Below are positions 39,963-60,637 of a stretch of DNA of 64,000 nucleotides, one piece after another. The stretch's first letter is position 1; every line of letters begins with the position of its first letter. A model generated the notes under the pieces. The model saw only the letters and a list, made by a program, of their open reading frames with translations. It was not told the origin of the DNA and searched no databases. The position numbers and the translations under genes are program-made. Source of the DNA: Setoptus koraiensis. Its lineage: Eukaryota > Animalia > Arthropoda. Location of the stretch: contig CM106586.1 in assembly GCA_048013815.1 (NCBI GenBank), positions 8,370,001 through 8,434,000 of the forward strand. Reading direction: 5' to 3'.

Positions 39963-40108
39963 CAAAGAAGCTTCTATCATCCGTCTAATACAGATAGACG
40001 ATGGCAGGGTAGACTTCAACAATTCCTATGTAAACTACCAGCTTGTTTTATTAGTCGGGTATATCGTGAACGATATAAAAAACAAACATGGACCGATACT
40101 GAAACGCC
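39963..40108 (+). pseudogene. PSME4: Proteasome activator PA200/Blm10 internal fragment
   Basis: A frame not shown in the ORF track reads SFYHPSNTDRRWQGRLQQFLCKLPACFISRVYRERYKKQTW, matching the conserved PSME4 segment SFYHPSN.G.W...L..L...LP.....R...ERY. No start, no stop, abutted by other gene fragments. Confidence 0.8.
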
Positions 40109-41084
40109 TATCCTTGGTTTATTCCATTTATATGTTGCGGAGGAGGTGGGTCCCAGAATATCTTGATGGCTGTAGAGTTCAGCGCCTCAGCCACGACTCT
40201 TTGGGGAGACTTATCCGGTTTACCTTCTTTTGTTCTGACGCAGGTGCTTGAACTGAATGGACCTACACCTTTTTCGTTCGCTGCTGCAACTTGAATCTCG
40301 TAATTTTGCCATACAATCAGATCATCCAATGTGTAATGCAATTGACTTGCGATGGTCACCTCGTGATCGTACCATTGTTGTATACCCTCATAACCTGCCA
40401 ACCTATGATGTATCTTGTATCCGACCAGCTGACCATTTTGAGTATCATCTGGAGGTGGTGACCAATTTATTGTGATGGAATTTGACGATCTTGGTGCTCC
40501 CACGACATTCAAGGGCGGCGCACTGGGTGGTTGAGCAGGAATTTCTATCGGAATTTTGGTCTGTTCGCTAGGCTCACCAGTTCCAACTTTATTGGTTGCC
40601 CTCACTCTGAAGACGTACTTCTTGGCAGGTTTGAGGTTAGATATAATTACGCTAGTATGATCACCTGATATATTCAATGGGACCATTTCCCATGATGCAG
40701 CAATATCTGTATCTGGATTTTTGATGTCAGGTATGGTGCGCATTTCAATATGGTAACGTATTACTGGGCTGTTGCCATCGAAACCGGGCACCCAGTACAC
40801 TCGTATGGCTGGTCCTTCTCCATCAGAAAGCTCCGCATTTATTTGACTTGGAGGTAGAGGCAATTGTAAGATACTAAGCTCAGCCGATCTAGAATTCTGC
40901 CGTCGAACCCATCACAACTTGTTGAGGCTGTGGGTAATCTCTGAACAAGGCTCGCGAATTTTCTGTCTGTGCTGGTTCGGGGGGAACTGTCGATGTCGAT
41001 CCGATGTTAGTGGATGCTGGAATGAATTTCTCACAAATAAAACTTCTCCTCAGATTTGAATCAAACATAGGTATCAAACCAAAC
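40109..41084 (-). pseudogene. Duplicated Sidekick fragment with 185-bp internal deletion
   Basis: 40109-40895 = 50904-51690 and 40893-41084 = 51873-52064; 7 substitutions in 976 bp by manual comparison; AAT microhomology at the deletion. Confidence 0.97.
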
Positions 41085-41097
41085 CTTTGGCTAAGGT

Positions 41098-41840
41098 CTA
41101 GTTGACTAATGCAACTTTTATTTTATTTTCTTTTGTCACAGGTTCTTTCTGTTCTTTTGTTTGTTCAGGCGTATCAGGTGCAACATCTGGAAGCTGGAGC
41201 TCACTTATTCCTGCTTTCTGTTCTTTTGTCCTTTCAGGCGTGTCAGGTGCGACATTTGGAAGCTCGAGCTCACGCCTCTCTTCAAGTTCCTCCATGAGCT
41301 CTTTTTCATCATAGCTCCCTCTCAATAAGCTGGATATCTCCTTTTGTTTAGCTGCAGCCTCTTCATTCTCTTCTAATATTTTCTGAATATTTTCTACCGA
41401 CATCATGTCCTGCAGCTGTTTGAGTTGATCATTGGCCAATTTGATGCCTTCGAATACACTGATCTGATTTTGACGATCTTCAATATCCTGCACGAGTGTC
41501 TCTAATGTTAATAATTGCCCGTCAGTCCTTTTCAAAACTTCTTCCATATTTTTCTTCTTCCTAAGTATGACTAGAGCTCTCCTGAAGAAAGAAGCAAAAT
41601 ATTAGTAATTTAGTAAATATAATATCAGTAATCAATTTGAAATGTGCATGTGTATACTTACTCTTTCATATTCTTATTTAATAATTCTATAGCTAAACGT
41701 TTCTCCTCTTCCAGTTTTGACTCTATTCTGTTCTGATAAATTTTGATCCTATCCCTCAAATGCTTCACTTGCAAGATGGCACGATCCGTGGGTGTCACAG
41801 TCACCGCTGGGGCTCGTTTGAATGTAAATAGATTGCCCAT
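41098..41840 (-). CDS. CHMP6: ESCRT-III CHMP6/Vps20; exons 41840-41662 and 41581-41098 (220 aa)
   Basis: Myristoylation-type start MGNLF, TDRAILQVKHLRDRIKIYQ, spliced MKE|RALVILRKKK (GT 41661, AG 41582; 80-nt intron), QLLTLETLVQDIE and a C-terminal LPxV-P motif. Confidence 0.92.
41145..41273 (-). repeat. 69-bp in-frame tandem duplication in the CHMP6 C-terminus
   Basis: ELELPNVAPDTPERTKEQK and ELQLPDVAPDTPEQTKEQK; units start at 41145 and 41214. Confidence 0.92.
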
Positions 41841-41892
41841 ATTTGATTGTTTTGGTTGAAATAACAAATACCAAATACACAAATATCTACGA

Positions 41893-48283: not shown

Positions 48284-51200
48284 TTATACAAATGACGTGA
48301 ATCCGGGCAATGGAGCGCGACTTCCAGCCATATTATCTACAATAATTCTTCCACCGTTAAGATTAACGATTGGACTTTCTAATGCGTCTTTTTGACCTTC
48401 ATCCTCAGTTGTTGTTTTGGCGTTCGATCTATCGGTTGAGTCATAGTCCGCCATTTGTCCCGAAGTGTTTCCGTTAGTTAATGCATTGCTTGATGAGGTC
48501 CCCGGCATGTTCGGAACAAGAGGTATTGATGGAGCTGAGCGTTGGGGCAATTTTGGTTTAGTCTTTCCGCCAACCACGTACGATTTAGCATTCTTCTTCC
48601 AGCCAGCAGTTTGCTGACCACCTCTCAAGGTTCCGTTTACATTGGCATAGTGATTGACAAAATGCTTATTTGCCATATTTACATACTCATCATCCTGTTC
48701 AGAATCAGATTCATCCTCAGGACCAGTACTACTAATCTCACTAGGTTTTTCGGTTAGACTCTCTCCGCTGCTGTCATAATTGGATAAAGCATTTGTCATA
48801 CCTTTGGGGGCAGGCGAGTCCTCGAAAACATCGTCATCCCCTTCTTCATCCGAGTAAGCAACGGACCCGGGATGAGGCCGAGGCGGTGATTTCAAGGTAC
48901 CTAGTCCGTTGACATTCGAAGAGAGAGTAGCATTACTACGACGATGTGATTGTGCAGAATTTTGTGCTAGAAGACCAAAGCCAGGATTGTAATTGTTATC
49001 ATGGTCGTCTATGGTGAATCCAGCATCACCAAGTCTATCTTGGCTTGAACATGATTTAATTGCTTCTTGTTGATATTTGTAACTCTTATTCTGAATGAAA
49101 AGTATCGCTGTTATAATGATGGTGATAACAATACTGAGACACGCGCATAATATCACGAACCAACTCTCACGATAAAATGGCAATGTAACTCTCAGCTCTA
49201 AGTCGGTTGTATAGACTGCAATTGTTGCTGGTGCTCCCCATCCTTCTTTAGTTTTAGCCATTACATTGAATAAGTAATGCTTGTATGGTTCTAAATTGGA
49301 CACTTTCAAAGATCTTTCACCACTTGATAGTTCTTGGGCTGCTAGCTCTTTACTGTTTGGTGCATAGAGTCTATAAGAGACAAGATAGTTTAATATCTCG
49401 CCGTTGGGATTATCTGGTACATCCCATAATATCCTAGCACTAGTCTTAGTCACGGTAGGGTAGGATAGATTCGTTGGAGGGCCTGGCGTTCCCTCTAGTG
49501 TTTGAATATTCAGTACACTACTATAAATTCCGTCCCCGACTGAAGTAACGGCACATATTGCTAAATTGTACATCGTATAGGGTGTGAGGTCACTCAGAGT
49601 TGTTCGTTGCTGCTCAGTTGCATTCGATGAAATAAATTTTTGCTTGGACTCTGACAAAGAAGAATGATGATACCTAATCCTGTATCCTTGAATGACACCG
49701 TTCCTATGAATTTCGGGAACTGGTTCCCAATCTAATTGAATGGAAGTTGGTGTCAGAGAAACGCCGTTAAAGTTTGTGGGGCTTGCTGATGGTACATCCT
49801 CTAAAGTCTTTTCCGTGACCCTGCTAACTGAGCTAGGTCCGACGTCATTCAATGCACATATTTTTATAACATATTCAGTGAACTCCTCTAGATTTTGAAT
49901 TACAAAATCTTCAGCAGATGCATCGATAATGATGGACGAATTTGTTGTTGCGGCCAAGTGTTCAACTGGAGACCAAGTGATATTGTAACCTCGTGGATGG
50001 CCCCTCCAAGCAACTAGTGGAAGAGGAACCCACTGCAGTCTTATAGAGGTAGAGGAGGAACTCTTCGCTTTGAATGCCTCGGGTGGTCTTTCGGGTTGCA
50101 TCTGTAATGTTTGGAAGTCAGGCGATGGACTCGATGGGTTTATACTTCTGCCTACAACATTGGCTGGAATTAAACGAATCCGATATTTGGTAAATGGAAG
50201 AAGATTTCTGACGACGACTGCATCGGCCTGGGTATGATTTGTCGAGACGTAAACTTGTTCCCAAACATTGCTCTGATCTACAATTTGAGCTTCTGCTATC
50301 CATTTTTCTATCGATGCATTCCCATCGAATCCGGGTTTGAATTGGATCATCACCGAAGTTGGGCCGATATTTGAGTACGCTAGGTTGCTGGGTGGTAGTG
50401 GGAGAACAGGTGGTATACTGGTCTGAGTTTGATTTATTTTTACCGGACCCTGACCCATGGCAGTGTGTGCATAGATCCTAAACACATACGGTGTCTGTGG
50501 AGTTAGATCCACAATCTTGGTCTCTAAAACATCGGCAGGAAACTCCCTTGAAATCTTGTTATCCGTGGCTGATGCTTCATAGTATTCTAAAGTATAGTGA
50601 TCCAATAAACCATTAGCCTGTTTCGGAGGTTTCCACAAAATTTTTAGGCTTTTATCAAGAACCTCAGCAAACTCCAGAGATTGAACAGCCTCTGGTATAT
50701 CCTGCTTAGTCTTCACTATAACTACGTTGTCATTTGTAGGACCGTCACCGGCACTGGTAAAACAAGAGACAGATATGTAATAATCCGTGAATGGTGTTAG
50801 ATTATCCATCACATAAGAATGTGTTGATGGAACCGGATTGGGTGTTACAGTGTGCTCTCTCGCTAGCTTAGTTCGAGATGAGTCGTACCATGCTTGCACG
50901 TTATATCCTTGGTTTATTCCATTTATATGTTGCGGAGGAGGTGGGTCCCAGAATATCTTGATGGCTGTAGAGTTCAGCGCCTCAGCCACGACTCTCTGGG
51001 GAGACTTATCCGGTTTACCTTCTTTTGTTCTGACGTAAGTACTTGAACTGAATGGACCTACACCTTTTTCGTTCGCTGCTGCAACTTGAATCTCATAATT
51101 TTGCCATACAATCAGATCATCCAATGTGTAATGCAATTGACTTGCGATGGTCACCTCGTGATCGTACCATTGTTGTATACCCTCATAACCTGCCAACCTA

Positions 51201-52885
51201 TGATGTATCTTGTATCCGACCAGCTGACCATTTTGAGTATCATCTGGAGGTGGTGACCAATTTATTGTGATGGAATTTGACGATCTTGGTGCTCCCACGA
51301 CATTCAAGGGCGGCGCACTGGGTGGTTGAGCAGGAATTTCTATCGGAATTTTGGTCTGTTCGCTAGGCTCACCAGTTCCAACTTTATTGGTTGCCCTCAC
51401 TCTGAAGACGTACTTCTTGGCAGGTTTGAGGTTAGATATAATTACGCTAGTATGATCACCTGATATATTCAATGGGACCATTTCCCATGATGCAGCAATA
51501 TCTGTATCTGGATTTTTGATGTCAGGTATGGTGCGCATTTCAATATGGTAACGTATTACTGGGCTGTTGCCATCGAAACCGGGCACCCAGTACACTCGTA
51601 TGGCTGGTCCTTCTCCATCAGAAAGCTCCGCATTTATTTGACTTGGAGGTAGAGGCAATTGTAAGATACTAAGCTCAGCCGATCTAGAATCGCGTCCTTG
51701 CGAAGGCGAGTGAATCGTACAGGTATAATTTCCAACATCTCCATTTCGAACCTGCTCTATTCTAAGTGTTCCATCCACCATCTTGATTCTACCAGAGTTA
51801 GTAGGCAATGTAAGATTTTTTCCGTTGAACAACCAATTGACTGCACTATCATCGAAAAGAGGTTTACATTTAAATTCTGCCGTCGAACCCATCACAACTT
51901 GTTGAGGCTGTGGGTAATCTCTGAACAAGGCTCGCGAATTTTCTGTCTGTGCTGGTTCGGGGGGAACTGTCGATATCGATCCGATGTTAGTGGATGCTGG
52001 AATGAATTTCTCACAAATAAAACTTCTCCTCAGATTTGAATCAAATATAGGTATCAAACCAAACTTTTTTCTTGATTGAGATTGAGAATAAGCAAAAGTT
52101 GAGGGCCTCGATGTGTTATTGGTGCTGTAATCCTCCAGCCAAAAATCAGAAAATGAGTCTGAATCTACATTAGGCTCATTTCTATCTACTCTACTCAAAT
52201 ACGATGCCATCAGTTCTTTGCTCGGCATAATATACCAAACTTTGTTGGCTGTTGAGTTCTTCTCTAACCATCTTGTTACAAACTCATGCTTTTCTTCACC
52301 ATCGAGAGCTATCAGATGAGAGTCCCATTCTTCGCATTTTGTCTTGGCACTCTCAAATGATTTTGGGTTTGATTGAAACTTATAGCAGCCTGAGTGATAT
52401 GGCATCCAGGAAGGTTTGCAATCAGAATGTTGCTCTTGTGCATATGAAACCACAGTGCCTAAAGCAAAGAGAATCAAAACAATTGTGCTAATGTTTAACG
52501 ATAGATTCCTAAATTGGTTTATCACAGAATCCTTAAGAGTAGCCCCACGAGCTCTCTTGCCATAGGAAAAAACTAACGCAGATACAGGCCCATGTGGCAG
52601 ATGTCGCCCTGGATGATGTTGAGCATTGTATGCATTGGTAGTGGTTGGAATGAGATCTGAGTTGAACGAAAGAGGTATCATGTCATCAGTATTTGATGTA
52701 TATGAACAGAATTGATGATTATCATAATAGCTATCTCTGTGAGTTGGGGTATTGATCAGCGGCCTTATCTCGCCAAGATTGCATGGAGTGCTTGAGATCA
52801 GTGTAAGTTTATCCGGATCAATGAGAGTATTGTTTCTATTCCTGGGGATCATCATGTTGCTTGTTCCACGAGTCATGATGGCCAT
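48284..52885 (-). CDS. sdk: Sidekick-derived adhesion molecule: C-type lectin + 1 Ig + 8 FN3 + TM + Sdk tail; intronless, 1533 aa
   Basis: The FN3 series matches Sdk FN1-8 (PGFDGNSP, QPPSAPP..RSS, INGINQGY, PGFDGNASI, RNGVIQGY); TM LPFYRESWFVIL; PDZ-binding end APLPGFTSFV. N-terminal CTL CKPSW..YHSGCYKF...F..A...C...DSHL...SFICE. Confidence 0.9.
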   Translation of the reverse strand: MAIMTRGTSNMMIPRNRNNTLIDPDKLTLISSTPCNLGEIRPLINTPTHRDSYYDNHQFCSYTSNTDDMIPLSFNSDLIPTTTNAYNAQHHPGRHLPHGPVSALVFSYGKRARGATLKDSVINQFRNLSLNISTIVLILFALGTVVSYAQEQHSDCKPSWMPYHSGCYKFQSNPKSFESAKTKCEEWDSHLIALDGEEKHEFVTRWLEKNSTANKVWYIMPSKELMASYLSRVDRNEPNVDSDSFSDFWLEDYSTNNTSRPSTFAYSQSQSRKKFGLIPIFDSNLRRSFICEKFIPASTNIGSISTVPPEPAQTENSRALFRDYPQPQQVVMGSTAEFKCKPLFDDSAVNWLFNGKNLTLPTNSGRIKMVDGTLRIEQVRNGDVGNYTCTIHSPSQGRDSRSAELSILQLPLPPSQINAELSDGEGPAIRVYWVPGFDGNSPVIRYHIEMRTIPDIKNPDTDIAASWEMVPLNISGDHTSVIISNLKPAKKYVFRVRATNKVGTGEPSEQTKIPIEIPAQPPSAPPLNVVGAPRSSNSITINWSPPPDDTQNGQLVGYKIHHRLAGYEGIQQWYDHEVTIASQLHYTLDDLIVWQNYEIQVAAANEKGVGPFSSSTYVRTKEGKPDKSPQRVVAEALNSTAIKIFWDPPPPQHINGINQGYNVQAWYDSSRTKLAREHTVTPNPVPSTHSYVMDNLTPFTDYYISVSCFTSAGDGPTNDNVVIVKTKQDIPEAVQSLEFAEVLDKSLKILWKPPKQANGLLDHYTLEYYEASATDNKISREFPADVLETKIVDLTPQTPYVFRIYAHTAMGQGPVKINQTQTSIPPVLPLPPSNLAYSNIGPTSVMIQFKPGFDGNASIEKWIAEAQIVDQSNVWEQVYVSTNHTQADAVVVRNLLPFTKYRIRLIPANVVGRSINPSSPSPDFQTLQMQPERPPEAFKAKSSSSTSIRLQWVPLPLVAWRGHPRGYNITWSPVEHLAATTNSSIIIDASAEDFVIQNLEEFTEYVIKICALNDVGPSSVSRVTEKTLEDVPSASPTNFNGVSLTPTSIQLDWEPVPEIHRNGVIQGYRIRYHHSSLSESKQKFISSNATEQQRTTLSDLTPYTMYNLAICAVTSVGDGIYSSVLNIQTLEGTPGPPTNLSYPTVTKTSARILWDVPDNPNGEILNYLVSYRLYAPNSKELAAQELSSGERSLKVSNLEPYKHYLFNVMAKTKEGWGAPATIAVYTTDLELRVTLPFYRESWFVILCACLSIVITIIITAILFIQNKSYKYQQEAIKSCSSQDRLGDAGFTIDDHDNNYNPGFGLLAQNSAQSHRRSNATLSSNVNGLGTLKSPPRPHPGSVAYSDEEGDDDVFEDSPAPKGMTNALSNYDSSGESLTEKPSEISSTGPEDESDSEQDDEYVNMANKHFVNHYANVNGTLRGGQQTAGWKKNAKSYVVGGKTKPKLPQRSAPSIPLVPNMPGTSSSNALTNGNTSGQMADYDSTDRSNAKTTTEDEGQKDALESPIVNLNGGRIIVDNMAGSRAPLPGFTSFV

Positions 52886-57600: not shown

Positions 57601-59945
57601 AAGTGAAACCGTCACCGAATACATGAATGTATCAAATGTGAAAGGTTAAATAGTATCACTTGTGTGTGTAGTTGTTGTTGTCTTTCTCAACAATGAAGCT
57701 GGTGAGCATCCAAACGTGTACTTCCTAAAAAATTGATACTACTACATGAGTCATTGTCAAAGTAGTAATTTGTTTGTTGTTGGTGTCGTTTTTATTGTTG
57801 CTGTCTCAAATTATGTCTTGCCTTTCAAACATATTGAAGAGTTGAAGAAAGAGAGATAATCTTGGAGATGTTTTCGGTCACAACAAACAGGAAAGGGAAT
57901 ATAGAATTGGAATAGTCCTAGAGCAACAAGTGCATACGATTGATAGAACTACTTTGGGTGGTTATTATTAACAATGTTAATACATCAAGACTGGAAATAG
58001 TCTTGTTGTTTGTTGAAATTATAGCAGTAAGTGCAGCAGCAGTAACAGCCAAAAGTAACGGCAAACGAAAAGAATAATAACATTTCGAAACCATTTGTAG
58101 CGACCTTGATATTGGAACCAGCAACTAAACCACGTTCGTTCTTTAATTTCATTTCTAATCTTCTAATTATATCGCCCTCTACCGCTGCACTAGTTATTAG
58201 TCACCGCCGAATGGTTGTATATCTTGTATATTTAGTCAGACAAATGAATTTTTGTTGCCGCTGTTGTTGTTGCGGTTGATGCAAGCTAATTTGATCTACT
58301 AACTGACTGATAGGTGACTGCAATTGAGATCTCAACTGAGTTATGATTGGCTCGCTTCAGACCAACTGATAAGACAATGAGAAGAAAGAAAAAAATGAAT
58401 CAAATACTTACCACTTGGCCCTAAAACTGCCGTCAATTGACCGGATCTGATGGTTCCGTTGAGATTGGAAAATATCTCTATTGCATCTAATGGGGAACGT
58501 GTTGGCGGTGGAATTTTAAGATTTTCATCACTTGATTGTCGTGTTGCGTTTGAATTGTTGTTTTCGGGCGATGTTGAACTGGCTGAACTCGATGCAGATG
58601 ACACAATTTGTTGTTGTGGAAATAATCTATCAAACAAATTGAATTTTTTGTACCATTTAGGTTCAATTCTGTAGCTGAGATTTGACCAATTTATCTCAAA
58701 ATGATCACTAGATGAGCTTATGTCACTGTTGGAGAATTGGCCCAACGATCTTCGTCTAGCGTGACCATTTTGGTCATGGCCAGCACCGTCTGAAGTTGAT
58801 TCTTTGGTCAGGTGATCCTCGTTCAAGTTTATTCTGTACGAAGATGACGAAGAAGAAGCTGTCGAGTGATAAAAAGATTGAAGCTGATGTGGGCCCTTCT
58901 TGAAGGAGGCCGCCGACTCATTTGGCGTTGCATGCTCTTGGCGATTGTTGATATTTGCGGCGTCGATACTGGCCTCATTATGCCCGTTATTAACGTTATT
59001 GTCGTTGTTGTTTGCGTTGACGCTGTTCTTCTTTTTCTTTTGTTTTTTGTTCTGTTTTTTATCCTCAATAATCATGGCCTCCTGATGATGATGATGATCT
59101 ATAATTGACGATGACGTTATGGACGATGATGCAGTTTGTTGACCGGCGGTGCTACTGCTACCCAATTCAGTGCTCTCACTATTGTTATCCTCTTCTATCT
59201 CACTACTGCTATTGCTATTCAAAATATAATTTTCATTGTCACTAGCATAACCATGATTGACATGACCAATAATTTGTTGATGATGATCATTGCTGCTCTG
59301 ATAATCTTTACCGTTATGATTATTATTACGATTATTATTGTTGTTATTATTATTGTTATTGTTGTTGTGATTGTTGATGTTGTTGTGGTTGTTTTTGTTG
59401 CCAACAACAACCACCGATATTGCCTGCACCGACGATGTTCCGTCGTTGCCTGTGGTCACAATATCAAGCTTGTTACGCTGGTCGGCAAGCATGTTCTTGT
59501 TGTTGCCCAGCACTTCAATAGTTGTGATAGTTGCACCAGTTTGTTCTGTCTGGTGACCGGATGCATTATAGATCAAATTGTTGCTGTCATTGTTGCTTGT
59601 CAGAGGTATTCTCTGGCGATTTTTCATCATCACTTTAGTTGTTGGTGAGCTGTGACGCGCAAGCAAATTATCATTGGTCTCTTGACCATTGATCACCGTT
59701 GGCATCATACTGTTGTCGTCTCGAGACACTTGTTGCTGCTGCTGCAAATCTCGATCACTGATATAGTCACCATGGGGTACAAATTGGCCTCTTAAATGTG
59801 TTTGTTGTTGTTGTTGTCCACTGCTATTCAACTGGTCGAACGTTCCCCTTGAAAGATTGTTGCTAGAATGCTGGCGTTGTTGCTGTTGTTGCTGCTGGAG
59901 CTGTTCCTCGTCACTTATTGGCTTGTATGATCGTAACGAGATCAT
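54667..59945 (-). CDS. ABCG (white/ABCG1-like) half transporter; exons 59945-58412, 57216-57094, 57000-56900, 56796-54667
   Basis: Walker A GPSG|AGKTT joined across GT..AG; signature ISGGQHKRVSIA; Walker B ILVLDEPTSGLD; H-loop TIHQP; C-terminal ABC2 membrane domain (LKETRNGWYSM, DLP). All three introns are GT-AG and keep the frame. Confidence 0.92.
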
Positions 59946-60637
59946 TGCTTCGTTTGTTGTCAGCTGTAACACTGAATAACTGAACTTTATTTGTTGTTTT
60001 TCTTGTTGTGTTTTATGACTAATGATAATAATGACTAATGAAGTTTTGCTCACTTGCAATTGGTCGCGCTCTTGCTAATCAGTGTGCCGCTTTGGCTTCA
60101 CTTGGACAAACAAAGGATGCAAACGACTTTGCACAATTATTGATGTTGTCTATTTAGAGTCATGTCACTGGTACCTGTTGTGTGTTATCTTGATAATTTG
60201 TTGAATTGCCAATTTACAACTTTTTGTCTTTGCAATAAATTCTCTGACTATATCTTTTGGTGTTGGTTTGCTCGAGAGTTTGCTAACTCGTTTAGTGTTG
60301 CCATAGTTTAAGATGTGTGTGTGTCGTATGTTTATTGTTTATGCTTATGTGTGTATTATTATTGTTCTTATGTAACGTTATGTTGTTGTTGTTTAGATGA
60401 TTCCAAGCTCAAGTGGAATGAGCGGATGAAGTGCTGTTTGAGTCATTGAGAGAAAGGGGCAAACACAGAGAGCGAGAGATAAAAAAAACTTAAGACAGTT
60501 CTTTTTTCGTTGCCATAACTTTATTTAACTCTCTCTGCTGACAATTCGCTTCTCGCTTGCCAAATCTCTCATCATCTTTGACTTTCACTCTCACTTTCAC
60601 TTTCACTATCGTTCAACACTGACACTGACACTTGATC

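What the first reader, a model, noticed from the sequence alone, without database searches (positions are those of the whole stretch)
48284..52885. Re-engineered Sidekick: lectin head replaces Ig1-5, and FN9-13 are missing
Seen in one uninterrupted ORF: hydrophobic leader (~52495-52440), C-type-lectin-like domain (~52425-52010), a single Ig resembling Sdk Ig6, eight FN3 repeats resembling Sdk FN1-8, TM, and the Sdk tail ending GFTSFV. Established: canonical Sidekick has 6 Ig + 13 FN3 and adheres homophilically through the Ig1-4 horseshoe; an N-terminal C-type lectin on an Ig/FN3 protein is a feature of arthropod Contactin. Inference: a natural chimera (possibly Contactin head + Sdk body) that cannot use the canonical homophilic interface and may signal to Sdk's PDZ partners through a new ligand. 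It could be a fixed, functional product of the same fragment-shuffling seen 10 kb away.
Basis: partly seen in the sequence, partly recalled or inferred. Interest (0 to 1): 0.8.

Follow-up and report, generated by a model that had tools for sequence, protein, structure and literature searches.

The report
Gall-mite Sidekick with lectin head
This gall mite's version of the cell-adhesion protein Sidekick has lost the part that normally sticks cells together and five of its stalk units. It has gained a lectin-like cap instead, and nearly all gall mites sampled share this rebuilt form, so it is an old, working redesign and not a recent accident.

Summary
One uninterrupted 1533-aa ORF (48284-52885, minus strand) encodes a hydrophobic leader, a C-type-lectin-like domain (CTLD), one Ig domain, eight FN3 domains, a TM segment and a tail ending GFTSFV. 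Ig plus FN3 align collinearly with Ig6+FN1-8 of spider Sidekick (45% identity). FN9-13 are removed exactly at domain borders. The CTLD fold is supported by an AlphaFold model (pLDDT 88) whose top Foldseek matches are all CTLDs, but it lacks the calcium/sugar motifs and the C2-C3 disulfide.

This is not a one-off chimera from local fragment shuffling. At least 22 orthologues, including Aceria tosichella, share the architecture and form one clade (100/100). The remodelling came in steps:
- Ig1-5 are also absent in Tetranychus and Brevipalpus; the annotated Dermatophagoides model has two FN3 before Ig5-6.
- FN9-13 are missing in all gall mites sampled.
- The CTLD is absent in early-branching Fragariocoptes.

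The FN3 fragment about 10 kb away is a dead, frameshifted 99% copy of this gene, not its source. A Contactin origin has no support and could not be tested. No RNA data were available. No paper found describes this, and a review Ig + 13 FN3 universal. The scan has no other note naming sidekick in this genome. New variant of a known kind; moderate interest.

The parts
48284..52885 (-). Complete intronless ORF of the remodelled Sidekick orthologue (1533 aa from Met1; the stop codon is 48284-48286)
   Evidence: The ORF is listed. It aligns collinearly with Aceria 'Protein sidekick' (54% identity over 1202 columns) and with spider Sidekick.
52679..52681 (-). Probable true start codon (Met69, 'MIP...'), giving a protein of about 1465 aa
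   Evidence: Many orthologues start MIS/MIP 20-60 aa before the hydrophobic segment. Residues upstream are not conserved (3% identity). Not confirmed by RNA.
52436..52504 (-). Hydrophobic leader / signal sequence (aa 128-150, ...STIVLILFALGTVVSYA|QEQ)
   Evidence: Read directly from the sequence. An equivalent hydrophobic segment precedes the lectin module in all orthologues. Cleavage is inferred.
51992..52432 (-). C-type-lectin-like domain (aa 152-298). It has four Cys (C0, C0', C1, C4), no C2-C3 pair and no conserved EPN/QPD+WND motif.
   Evidence: Pfam Lectin_C scores 23.7 bits against the 22.6 cut-off when the module is scanned alone. The profile matches only CTLDs in the PDB. The AF2 model has pLDDT 88 and its Foldseek matches are CTLDs. 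Motifs and Cys were counted.
51926..51991 (-). Short linker between the lectin module and Ig (aa 299-320). It is much longer and of low complexity in most orthologues.
   Evidence: Alignment; 19% mean identity.
51665..51925 (-). Single Ig domain, orthologous to Sidekick Ig6 (aa 321-407)
   Evidence: Pfam I-set, E 4.7e-11. It aligns to spider Sdk residues 573-660.
49202..51658 (-). Eight FN3 domains orthologous to Sidekick FN1-FN8 (aa 410-1228)
   Evidence: Pfam fn3 finds 8 stretches, E 4.7e-102. They align collinearly to spider Sdk up to residue 1481, the end of FN8.
49094..49201 (-). Post-FN linker 'LELRVT', the juxtamembrane motif LPFYRESW and the TM helix (about aa 1242-1264). This is the junction where FN9-13 are missing.
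   Evidence: The motif was compared with Tetranychus, Dermatophagoides, spider, tick and scorpion Sidekicks. Mean identity among orthologues is 77%.
48287..49093 (-). Cytoplasmic domain (about 269 aa) ending in the PDZ-type motif GFTSFV (48287-48304)
   Evidence: The last 27 residues are identical to Aceria. The last 33 aa are 82% identical on average across orthologues. The tail has the class I S-x-V form defined in PMC7479261.
40109..41088 (-). Dead partial copy of this gene. It matches gene 50904-51690 and 51873-52068, i.e. the end of the CTLD, linker, start of Ig, and FN1-2 with the start of FN3. About 182 bp of the Ig core are deleted, causing a frameshift.
   Evidence: blastn gives 99.4% and 98.5% identity. 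The protein match is 249/251 aa. The frames were read. Read depth is doubled and unitigs break at exactly these borders.

Best explanation
This is the gall-mite (Eriophyoidea) orthologue of the adhesion receptor Sidekick, in a remodelled form fixed across the clade. It is a type I membrane protein with a flexibly tethered C-type-lectin-like head, then Ig6, a stalk of FN1-8, the conserved Sidekick juxtamembrane and TM segment, and a cytoplasmic tail ending in the class I PDZ ligand GFTSFV.

Shown:
- The architecture, and orthology to Sidekick.
- The CTLD fold.
- An in-frame loss of FN9-13 exactly at domain borders.
- Stepwise history. Ig1-5 are also absent in spider mites. FN9-13 are absent in all gall mites sampled. 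The CTLD is present in every sampled gall mite except Fragariocoptes, the earliest branch in a midpoint-rooted tree (the root is not fixed by an outgroup).
- The strongest conservation lies in the TM-proximal region and the C-terminus.

Inferred:
- The protein still anchors to PDZ scaffolds (the Polychaetoid/ZO-1, MAGI and Canoe class) at cell contacts.
- It cannot make the canonical Ig1-4 back-to-back dimer.
- The CTLD lacks the calcium/sugar motifs and the C2-C3 disulfide but keeps an invariant core. It probably acts as a sugar-independent protein-binding cap that gives the shortened ectodomain a new recognition surface, homophilic or heterophilic.
- The intronless state fits the reverse-transcriptase-mediated intron loss described for eriophyoid genomes.
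For: - ORF and domains.
- Ig6+FN1-8 collinearity at 45% identity.
- Same architecture in Aceria, with an identical 27-aa C-terminus.
- At least 22 orthologues of 1458-1639 aa all align from Ig6 to FN8 only.
- All 24 short forms make one clade with 100/100 support, and the CTLD tree is congruent.
- CTLD fold.
- Across 23 sequences, 7 columns are invariant (C, W, C, C, G, C, E), all have exactly four Cys, and none has a conserved EPN/QPD+WND.
- Precise junction after FN8.
- Per-domain conservation is CTLD 25%, Ig/FN 39-60%, juxtamembrane+TM 77%, last 33 aa 82%.
- Tetranychus and Brevipalpus have signal+Ig6+FN1-13, and Dermatophagoides has 2 FN3+Ig5-6+FN1-13.
- The Fragariocoptes locus has signal+Ig6+FN1-8+TM+GFTSFV, with no CTLD in 18.7 kb in any frame.
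- Canonical biology comes from PMC5045292 (Ig1-4 dimer) and PMC7479261 (PDZ tail, MAGI, Polychaetoid). Intron loss comes from PMC7738191.
Against: - There is no expression evidence for this species: no holder run is recorded as RNA. The start codon is therefore inferred.
- No function of the CTLD has been tested. It is the fastest-evolving folded part (25% identity), and Fragariocoptes does without it, so it may be dispensable or only modulatory.
- A second, canonical sdk elsewhere in this genome could not be excluded, because only this 64-kb window could be searched (one search covers the window only).
- The Tetranychus, Brevipalpus and Dermatophagoides N-termini rest on automated gene models or ORF calls.
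- The Logan unitigs listed do not individually bridge 51974-52016, although depth is continuous there.
Confidence: 0.75

Rival explanations
1. This is a recent, lineage-private natural chimera made by the same local fragment shuffling seen about 10 kb away, with its lectin head taken from arthropod Contactin.
For: A patchwork of copied gene pieces lies at 39.5-43.3 kb and includes Sidekick-derived sequence. Drosophila Contactin has an N-terminal C-type lectin-like domain (PMC8006247).
Against: - The architecture is shared by at least 22 deeply diverged orthologues in one clade, with congruent CTLD and Ig-FN trees, so the fusion is ancient.
- The nearby fragment is a 98.5-99.4% identical, frameshifted copy that spans the lectin-Ig junction. 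It was copied from the finished gene.
- No search tied the CTLD to Contactin.
- The loss of Ig1-5 and the loss of FN9-13 predate the CTLD.
Confidence: 0.05
2. This is a paralogue. Gall mites also keep a canonical Sidekick, and this gene is a derived duplicate with a new role.
For: The whole genome could not be searched. One species carries a tandem extra copy of the signal+CTLD cassette (P0130), so duplications do occur at this locus.
Against: - Among the 120 best hits, the only named eriophyoid proteins are the short forms of Aceria and Fragariocoptes. No canonical-length eriophyoid Sdk appears, although it would score about 1000 bits.
- The short forms keep the Sidekick-specific juxtamembrane and C-terminal sequences almost unchanged.
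- Spider mites likewise show only the Ig6-start form.
- The scan has no other note naming sidekick in this genome.
Confidence: 0.1
3. The lectin head is a true calcium-dependent carbohydrate-recognition domain, making this Sidekick a glycan receptor.
For: The fold is a CTLD, and its closest structural matches are sugar-binding CRDs (DCIR, dectin-2, mincle, DC-SIGNR). The window's copy happens to contain an EPN tripeptide.
Against: That EPN is not shared by any of the 22 orthologues. No WND or QPD motif is conserved. The C2-C3 disulfide that braces the sugar-binding loop is absent from all 23. The long-loop region is the least confident part of the model (pLDDT 70-78), and only the first 50 or so profile positions match other CTLDs.
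Confidence: 0.1
4. This is an assembly or annotation artefact, or a decaying pseudogene.
For: The Logan unitigs break inside the gene, and a dead copy exists nearby.
Against: The 4.6-kb frame is open and collinear with orthologues from independent assemblies. The unitig breaks coincide exactly with the borders of the duplicated segment, where depth doubles. Three or four independent studies hold the sequence with no differences outside the duplicate, apart from one site. The core residues are conserved.
Confidence: 0.02

Closest known systems
Canonical Sidekick (Drosophila Sdk, vertebrate Sdk1/Sdk2, spider and tick Sdk)
   Same: It is orthologous over Ig6+FN1-8 (41-46% identity to spider Sdk across the short forms). 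It shares the juxtamembrane motif LPFYRExWF, the single TM helix, the conserved cytoplasmic blocks and a C-terminal ...SRAPLPGF(S/T)SFV class I PDZ ligand.
   Different: It lacks Ig1-5, and so lacks the Ig1-4 horseshoe that mediates cis and trans homodimers (PMC5045292). It lacks FN9-13. It carries an N-terminal CTLD. Its tail is GFTSFV, not the GFSSFV said to be present in all bilaterian Sdks (PMC7479261). The ectodomain has 10 domains where canonical Sdk has 19.
Spider-mite Sidekick (Tetranychus urticae XP_015796004, Brevipalpus obovatus XP_074594356)
   Same: It also starts at Ig6 directly after the leader, so it also lacks the horseshoe. It has the same post-stalk LEL linker.
   Different: It keeps all 13 FN3 domains and has no CTLD. 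Pfam finds nothing in its N-terminal 110-125 aa.
Fragariocoptes setiger Sidekick (true gene in GCA_019968535.1 contig JAIFTH010000082; the public model is mis-fused to an ankyrin gene)
   Same: It has signal, Ig6, FN1-8, TM and a GFTSFV tail, and is the first branch of the short-form clade.
   Different: It has no lectin head: the signal peptide runs straight into Ig6, and the lectin profile finds nothing in the 18.7-kb locus. It keeps one intron in FN1.
Arthropod Contactin
   Same: It has an N-terminal C-type lectin-like domain ahead of Ig and FN3 domains on a cell-surface adhesion protein (PMC8006247, Table 1).
   Different: Contactin is GPI-anchored, with 6 Ig + 4 FN3 (the Ig/FN3 count is as given for the contactin family in PMC5045292), and has no PDZ tail. 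No specific sequence relationship between the two lectin domains was found or could be tested.
Non-sugar-binding C-type lectin-like domains (NK-receptor type CTLDs such as CD69, NKG2D, LOX-1)
   Same: It has the CTLD fold with the long-form N-terminal Cys pair, lacks the calcium/sugar motifs, and scores well against the profile (CD69, NKG2D and LOX-1 are among the hits). The likely role is protein recognition.
   Different: The mite domain also lacks the C2-C3 disulfide, and the second half of its sequence is specific to this family. The resemblance is one of kind, not of ancestry.

Membership tests
Sidekick (Sdk) | Sequence orthology to Sdk over a long collinear stretch, and placement with Sdk in a tree | tested here: met
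   45% identity over 921 columns to spider Sdk Ig6-FN8. All of the top 120 database hits that carry a name are sidekick or uncharacterised/hypothetical proteins. The short forms branch as one clade next to mite and other chelicerate Sdks.
Sidekick (Sdk) | Six N-terminal Ig domains, with Ig1-4 forming the homophilic horseshoe | tested here: not met
   There is only one Ig (aa 321-407), aligned to Ig6. No Ig1-5 remnant exists elsewhere in the window.
Sidekick (Sdk) | Thirteen FN3 domains | tested here: not met
   There are eight FN3 domains, aligned to FN1-8. FN8 is followed directly by the post-FN13 linker.
Sidekick (Sdk) | Single-pass TM with the conserved juxtamembrane motif and a cytoplasmic domain of about 200-400 aa | tested here: met
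   The sequence LPFYRESWFVILCACLS... matches Dermatophagoides, spider, tick and scorpion Sdks. The cytoplasmic part is about 269 aa.
Sidekick (Sdk) | C-terminal hexapeptide GFSSFV | tested here: not met
   The tail is GFTSFV here and in all short forms with an intact end, while canonical Sdks in the same search end GFSSFV.
Sidekick (Sdk) | Class I PDZ-binding end (-S/T-X-V) | tested here: met
   The protein ends -S-F-V. The motif definition is from PMC7479261. Actual binding was not tested.
C-type lectin-like domain (CTLD) superfamily | CTLD fold | tested here: met
   The AF2 model has pLDDT 88.2 and pTM 0.82. Its Foldseek PDB matches are all CTLDs at probability 1.00. ESM Atlas shape matches have TM 0.68-0.71 to Lectin_C clusters.
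C-type lectin-like domain (CTLD) superfamily | Pfam Lectin_C above the gathering score | tested here: met
   23.7 bits against the 22.6 cut-off for the isolated module, covering profile positions 2-107/107. The score is only 18.1 bits when the whole protein is scanned. Of the 23 orthologues, 16 match the related UL45 family.
C-type lectin-like domain (CTLD) superfamily | Two core disulfides (C1-C4 and C2-C3) | tested here: not met
   All 23 members have exactly four Cys, at the positions of C0, C0', C1 and C4. The C2-C3 pair is absent.
Calcium-dependent carbohydrate-recognition domain (true C-type lectin) | EPN or QPD motif plus WND motif in the long-loop region | tested here: not met
   No such motif is conserved. 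A lone EPN occurs only in the window's copy, and WND is absent.
Arthropod Contactin | CTLD + 6 Ig + 4 FN3 with a GPI anchor | tested here: not met
   This protein has 1 Ig, 8 FN3, a TM helix and a PDZ tail.
Arthropod Contactin | A lectin domain specifically related to the Contactin lectin domain (donor relationship) | not tested
   No arthropod Contactin sequence was available from the tools. The profile, feature and word searches gave no Contactin lead, but none of them was a direct comparison.

The most novel reading that the evidence does not exclude
Acariform mites have dismantled the Sidekick adhesive head, which is otherwise conserved from placozoans to humans. They then rebuilt it differently in separate lineages: two FN3 domains in the annotated Dermatophagoides pteronyssinus model, nothing in spider mites, and a sugar-independent lectin-like cap in most gall mites, on a stalk cut from 13 to 8 FN3 domains.

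If so, Sidekick's essential job in these animals does not need the Ig1-4 homophilic dimer. The job would reside in the membrane-proximal stalk, the TM segment and the PDZ tail. The gall-mite CTLD would be a newly evolved recognition interface with its own ligand.
Probability: 0.35. Interest if true: 0.7.

Novelty: new variant of a known kind. Interest (0 to 1): 0.55.

Why it matters
Sidekick is a textbook example of an adhesion receptor whose 6 Ig + 13 FN3 layout and GFSSFV tail are described as invariant from placozoans or bilaterians to humans (PMC7479261). Its adhesion and specificity are attributed to the Ig1-4 horseshoe (PMC5045292).

A whole, ancient mite clade keeps the gene under clear constraint without that horseshoe. 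It has half the ectodomain and a different head. This is a natural deletion and replacement experiment that:
- separates what the stalk, TM segment and PDZ tail do from what the homophilic head does;
- offers a defined candidate for a new recognition module, the CTLD;
- gives a stepwise series (spider mites, then Fragariocoptes, then other gall mites) for studying how large multi-domain receptors are remodelled during extreme miniaturisation and genome streamlining.

It also corrects one public gene model: the Fragariocoptes 'Protein sidekick, partial' is fused to an ankyrin-repeat gene.

Tried and rejected
1. **Donor of the lectin head.**
   - A profile search of 1.84 billion representatives found only family members over the full length. 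All other hits were multi-CTLD proteins matching only profile positions of about 2-50.
   - ESM Atlas feature and shape searches gave generic Lectin_C clusters.
   - A word search restricted to aa 152-298 gave nothing, not even the family, so it says nothing either way.
   - The origin stays open.
2. **P0130 as a possible ancestral stand-alone donor.** Rejected. It groups with the head of its own neighbouring Sdk gene (100/98 support, 48% identity), so it is a lineage-specific tandem duplicate.
3. **Expression.** No run holding the stretch is recorded as RNA. The reads call showed only Logan contigs, which cannot show transcription.
4. **Apparent strain variants in run X4.** Rejected. The five differences at 50996-51095 are exactly the sequence of the dead copy at 40 kb. 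Only 51710 G>C (His392Gln) lies outside the duplicate.
5. **Remnants of Ig1-5 or FN9-13 as separate genes in the window.** None were found. All hits are cross-matches to the gene's own domains or to its dead copy. The upstream neighbours are an ABC transporter and an ORF with no Pfam match.
6. **Literature.** No paper in the searched library combines sidekick with Eriophyoidea, Tetranychus or mite. The Aculops genome paper does not mention sidekick, adhesion, immunoglobulin or Dscam.
7. **Species identity.** Not established. A 47-Mb, two-chromosome genome such as Setoptus koraiensis (PMC11920263) would fit the scan's description and the basal tree position, but this is only an inference.

Full report

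Yes. The minus strand of 48284-52885 is one open frame of 1533 codons.

- Pfam finds one I-set Ig domain (aa 321-407) and eight FN3 domains. It gives a sub-threshold Lectin_C match of 18.1 bits when the whole protein is scanned.
- The protein ends GFTSFV.
- A hydrophobic segment (aa 128-150, ending VSYA|QEQ) precedes the lectin-like region.
- BLASTP against Parasteatoda Sidekick aligns aa 325-1228 with residues 573-1481 of the 2209-aa spider protein, at 45% identity, with no rearrangement. Pfam parsing of the spider protein shows that stretch is Ig6 plus FN1-8.
- Directly after FN8 (…IAVYTTD) comes LELRVTLPFYRESWFVILCACLS. This is the linker, juxtamembrane motif and TM helix that follow FN13 in Dermatophagoides (…TPSHLELRARMPYYRETWFVILCACLS), Tetranychus, spider, tick and scorpion. 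FN9-13 are therefore missing through a clean in-frame deletion at domain borders, not through a hybrid repeat.

**2. Is the N-terminal module a C-type lectin fold?**

Yes, as a fold; no, as a classical sugar-binding lectin.

- Scanned alone, aa 152-298 reaches the Lectin_C gathering score (23.7 against 22.6) across the entire profile. Of the 23 orthologous modules, 16 match the CTLD-like UL45 family.
- A profile of the 23 modules (alignment A1) matches only C-type lectin domains among solved structures: mannose-receptor family, DEC-205, CD72, NKG2D, CD69, DC-SIGN and LOX-1.
- An AlphaFold2 model built on A1 has mean pLDDT 88.2 and pTM 0.82. Its top 50 listed Foldseek PDB matches are all CTLDs at probability 1.00. 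ESM Atlas shape matches are Lectin_C clusters with TM 0.68-0.71.
- All 23 modules have exactly four Cys, at the positions of C0, C0', C1 and C4. The C2-C3 pair is absent, and no EPN/QPD plus WND motif is conserved. The window's lone EPN is not shared by any orthologue.
- The long-loop region is the least confident part of the model. Only the first 50 or so profile positions resemble other CTLDs.

**3. Is it a one-off chimera?**

No. The word-based protein search returned a block of proteins of 1458-1639 aa covering 72-93% of the query (one further short-form hit, the mis-fused 1782-aa Fragariocoptes model, is longer). The block includes 'Protein sidekick' of Aceria tosichella, and canonical Sidekicks of about 2100-2400 aa covered only 59%.

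- Mapped on the spider protein, all 24 short forms (the window plus 23 database proteins) align from about residue 573 to 1479-1481, with two starting slightly earlier (518, 560). That is Ig6 to FN8.
- All of them with an intact end finish GFTSFV, while canonical proteins finish GFSSFV.
- A maximum-likelihood tree of the shared Ig6-FN8 region puts the 24 short forms in one clade with 100/100 support. Fragariocoptes branches first and the window's gene second, on a long branch. The tree is midpoint-rooted, so the branching order depends on that root.
- A tree of the lectin modules alone recovers the same sister pairs and the same early-branching trio of the window, P0021 and P0022. The head has therefore travelled with the gene since a single acquisition.
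- The lectin profile hits 25 of the 129 Sidekick sequences collected. All 25 are short forms, and none is a canonical or other-mite protein.

**4. The remodelling was stepwise.**

- Cluster look-up names the intermediate-length hits. P0026 is Tetranychus urticae 'sidekick-like' (1827 aa), and P0030 clusters with Brevipalpus obovatus sidekick.
- Both start their match to spider Sdk at Ig6 and run to the C-terminus with FN1-13. In both, a hydrophobic leader is followed directly by Ig6, and Pfam finds nothing before it.
- The annotated Dermatophagoides pteronyssinus Sdk begins its match at Ig5 and has two FN3 domains ahead of it.
- The public Fragariocoptes model is fused to an ankyrin-repeat gene. 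In the DNA (locus L001), an ORF starts MHPFAIKFDAVVVILIVCCSRHVSA and runs straight into REYPQDQRVILSSTAEMKC, which is Ig6. After one short interruption in FN1, a 1082-aa ORF carries the rest of FN1 through FN8, the TM segment and GFTSFV.
- The lectin profile finds nothing in any frame of that 18.7-kb locus, while it finds the window's module at E 6.5e-33.
- The most parsimonious order, given the midpoint root, has three steps. Ig1-5 were lost early in acariform mites, or at least in the lines leading to spider mites and gall mites. FN9-13 were lost in the gall-mite stem. The CTLD was gained after Fragariocoptes split off. Gain in the stem followed by loss in Fragariocoptes needs one more event and is not excluded.
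- The window's module is the most compact (147 aa against 153-195). It lacks the acidic insertion and the long low-complexity linker of crown-group species, consistent with its early branch.

**5. Relation to the 'fragment shuffling' 10 kb away.**

- The ORF at 40108-40863 is 249/251 identical to aa 410-660 of this gene.
- At the DNA level, 40109-40895 matches 50904-51690 at 99.4%, and 40893-41088 matches 51873-52068 at 98.5%. About 182 bp of the Ig core are missing between the two pieces.
- The two pieces are in different frames, so the copy is dead.
- It includes the end of the lectin module, the linker and the start of Ig6. It was therefore copied from the already fused gene, and it is itself a second genomic record of the lectin-Ig junction.
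- In the reads call, unitigs of four runs break at exactly these borders, depth doubles between them, and a 57-nt unitig carries the deletion joint. The five 'differences' seen in run X4 are the copy's own sequence.
- The patchwork is thus a sink for a piece of this gene, not its source. An earlier follow-up on this window reads that region as a scar of break repair; I did not re-examine that.

**6. Junction and expression evidence.**

- No holder run is recorded as RNA, so expression in this species is untested.
- Three or four independent studies hold the stretch. Outside the duplicate there is one difference, 51710 G>C (His392Gln). Depth is continuous across the lectin-Ig junction in the deepest run, although the listed unitigs stop at 51974 and resume at 52016.
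- The stronger evidence for the junction is comparative: 22 independent assemblies encode leader, CTLD and Ig6 in one ORF.

**7. What constrains the protein?**

Mean identity of the window's protein to its 22 orthologues, by region:

| Region | Identity |
|---|---|
| Before Met69 | 3% |
| CTLD | 25% |
| Linker | 19% |
| Ig6 and FN1-8 | 39-60% |
| Juxtamembrane + TM | 77% |
| Proximal cytoplasmic block | 69% |
| Last 33 residues | 82% |

The last 27 residues are identical to Aceria. The lectin module keeps seven invariant columns (C, W, C, C, G, C, E) across very long branches.

**8. How it most likely works.**

Established for canonical Sidekick:
- The Ig1-4 horseshoe forms the back-to-back dimer required for both trans adhesion and cis clustering (PMC5045292).
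- The C-terminal S-x-V motif binds PDZ scaffolds: MAGI in vertebrates and Polychaetoid in flies. The fly protein sits at tricellular adherens junctions (PMC7479261).

Shown here: the horseshoe is absent, the tail and TM-proximal parts are the most conserved, and a folded CTLD without sugar-binding signatures caps a shortened stalk.

Inferred:
- The protein remains a PDZ-anchored surface receptor.
- Its outward-facing recognition can no longer be the canonical one.
- The CTLD, on a linker whose length varies from about 25 to about 100 residues, is a flexibly tethered protein-binding cap.
- Whether it binds itself or another ligand is unknown. Fragariocoptes and spider mites manage without any head, so the head may add or sharpen a function and need not carry the essential one.
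- The intronless state fits the massive, largely precise intron loss reported for eriophyoids (PMC7738191).

**9. Contactin as donor.**

Drosophila Contactin does carry a C-type lectin-like domain (PMC8006247). None of my searches connected the two lectin domains, and I had no arthropod Contactin sequence for a direct comparison. The one stand-alone signal+CTLD gene found (P0130, 1.1 kb upstream of the Sdk gene of an unnamed species, locus L002) is a duplicate of that species' own Sidekick head, not an ancestor. The donor is unresolved.

**10. Novelty.**

The proteins exist in public databases under the name 'sidekick', so the gene itself is not new. I found no paper in the searched library that combines sidekick with mites, and the Aculops genome paper does not mention it. 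The field's review states that 6 Ig + 13 FN3 holds even in cnidarians and placozoans, and that GFSSFV is present in all bilaterian Sdks (PMC7479261).

The mite forms break both statements. This is a new variant of a known kind, of moderate interest.

**11. Limits.**

- Only this window, not the genome, could be searched for a canonical paralogue.
- The start codon (Met69) and signal cleavage are inferred.
- The N-termini of other mites rest on automated models or ORF calls.
- The tree root is not fixed, so 'early' losses are stated by parsimony only.

Noticed in passing
window 40109-41088 (-): A dead, frameshifted partial copy of the Sidekick gene lies here. It covers aa 273-338 and 399-661 at 98.5-99.4% identity, with about 182 bp of the Ig core deleted. 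It directly abuts the 3' side of an Snf7/ESCRT-III gene at about 41314-41879 (-).
   Followed up: partly
L002:263-1249 and L002:2401-6777 (Logan SRR23513771 contig 26507): In an unnamed gall-mite species, a stand-alone gene (P0130, 328 aa) encodes a leader, the lectin module and a Q-rich tail. It sits 1.1 kb upstream of a complete short-form Sidekick (P0023). It is a tandem duplicate of that gene's own head (48% identity). Whether it is expressed as a secreted decoy is unknown.
   Followed up: partly
L002:6774-7610 (-) versus window about 41314-41879 (-): In L002 the Sidekick gene lies tail-to-tail with an Snf7 gene, overlapping it by 4 bp. In the window the intact Sidekick is about 6.4 kb from Snf7 and in a different relative orientation, with a FYVE-domain gene in between. 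This is consistent with a broken ancestral neighbourhood.
   Followed up: no
L001:6001-12671 (Fragariocoptes setiger, GCA_019968535.1 JAIFTH010000082): The public protein 'Protein sidekick, partial' (1782 aa) is a mis-fusion of an upstream ankyrin-repeat gene with Sidekick. The real Sidekick starts at the ATG at L001:8792, with its own signal peptide.
   Followed up: yes
P0025 (Dermatophagoides pteronyssinus sidekick, 2340 aa), residues 70-300: The annotated D. pteronyssinus Sidekick model has two FN3 domains between the signal sequence and Ig5, where Ig1-4 would be. This is a second, independent replacement of the adhesive head within mites.
   Followed up: partly
window 51710: A G>C difference (His392Gln, in the Ig domain) appears in three of the four public runs that hold the gene. 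It is the only difference outside the duplicated segment.
   Followed up: no
window 58341-60059 (-): A 572-aa ORF two genes upstream of Sidekick has no Pfam match at E<=0.001.
   Followed up: no
P0005, P0010, P0023 C-termini: Three orthologues end ...PGFTSCMNGLLM, ...PGFTSSMNGLLM and ...PLPGFTSLNFPN, not ...GFTSFV. This could be an ORF call running into a terminal intron, or a real change to the PDZ ligand.
   Followed up: no
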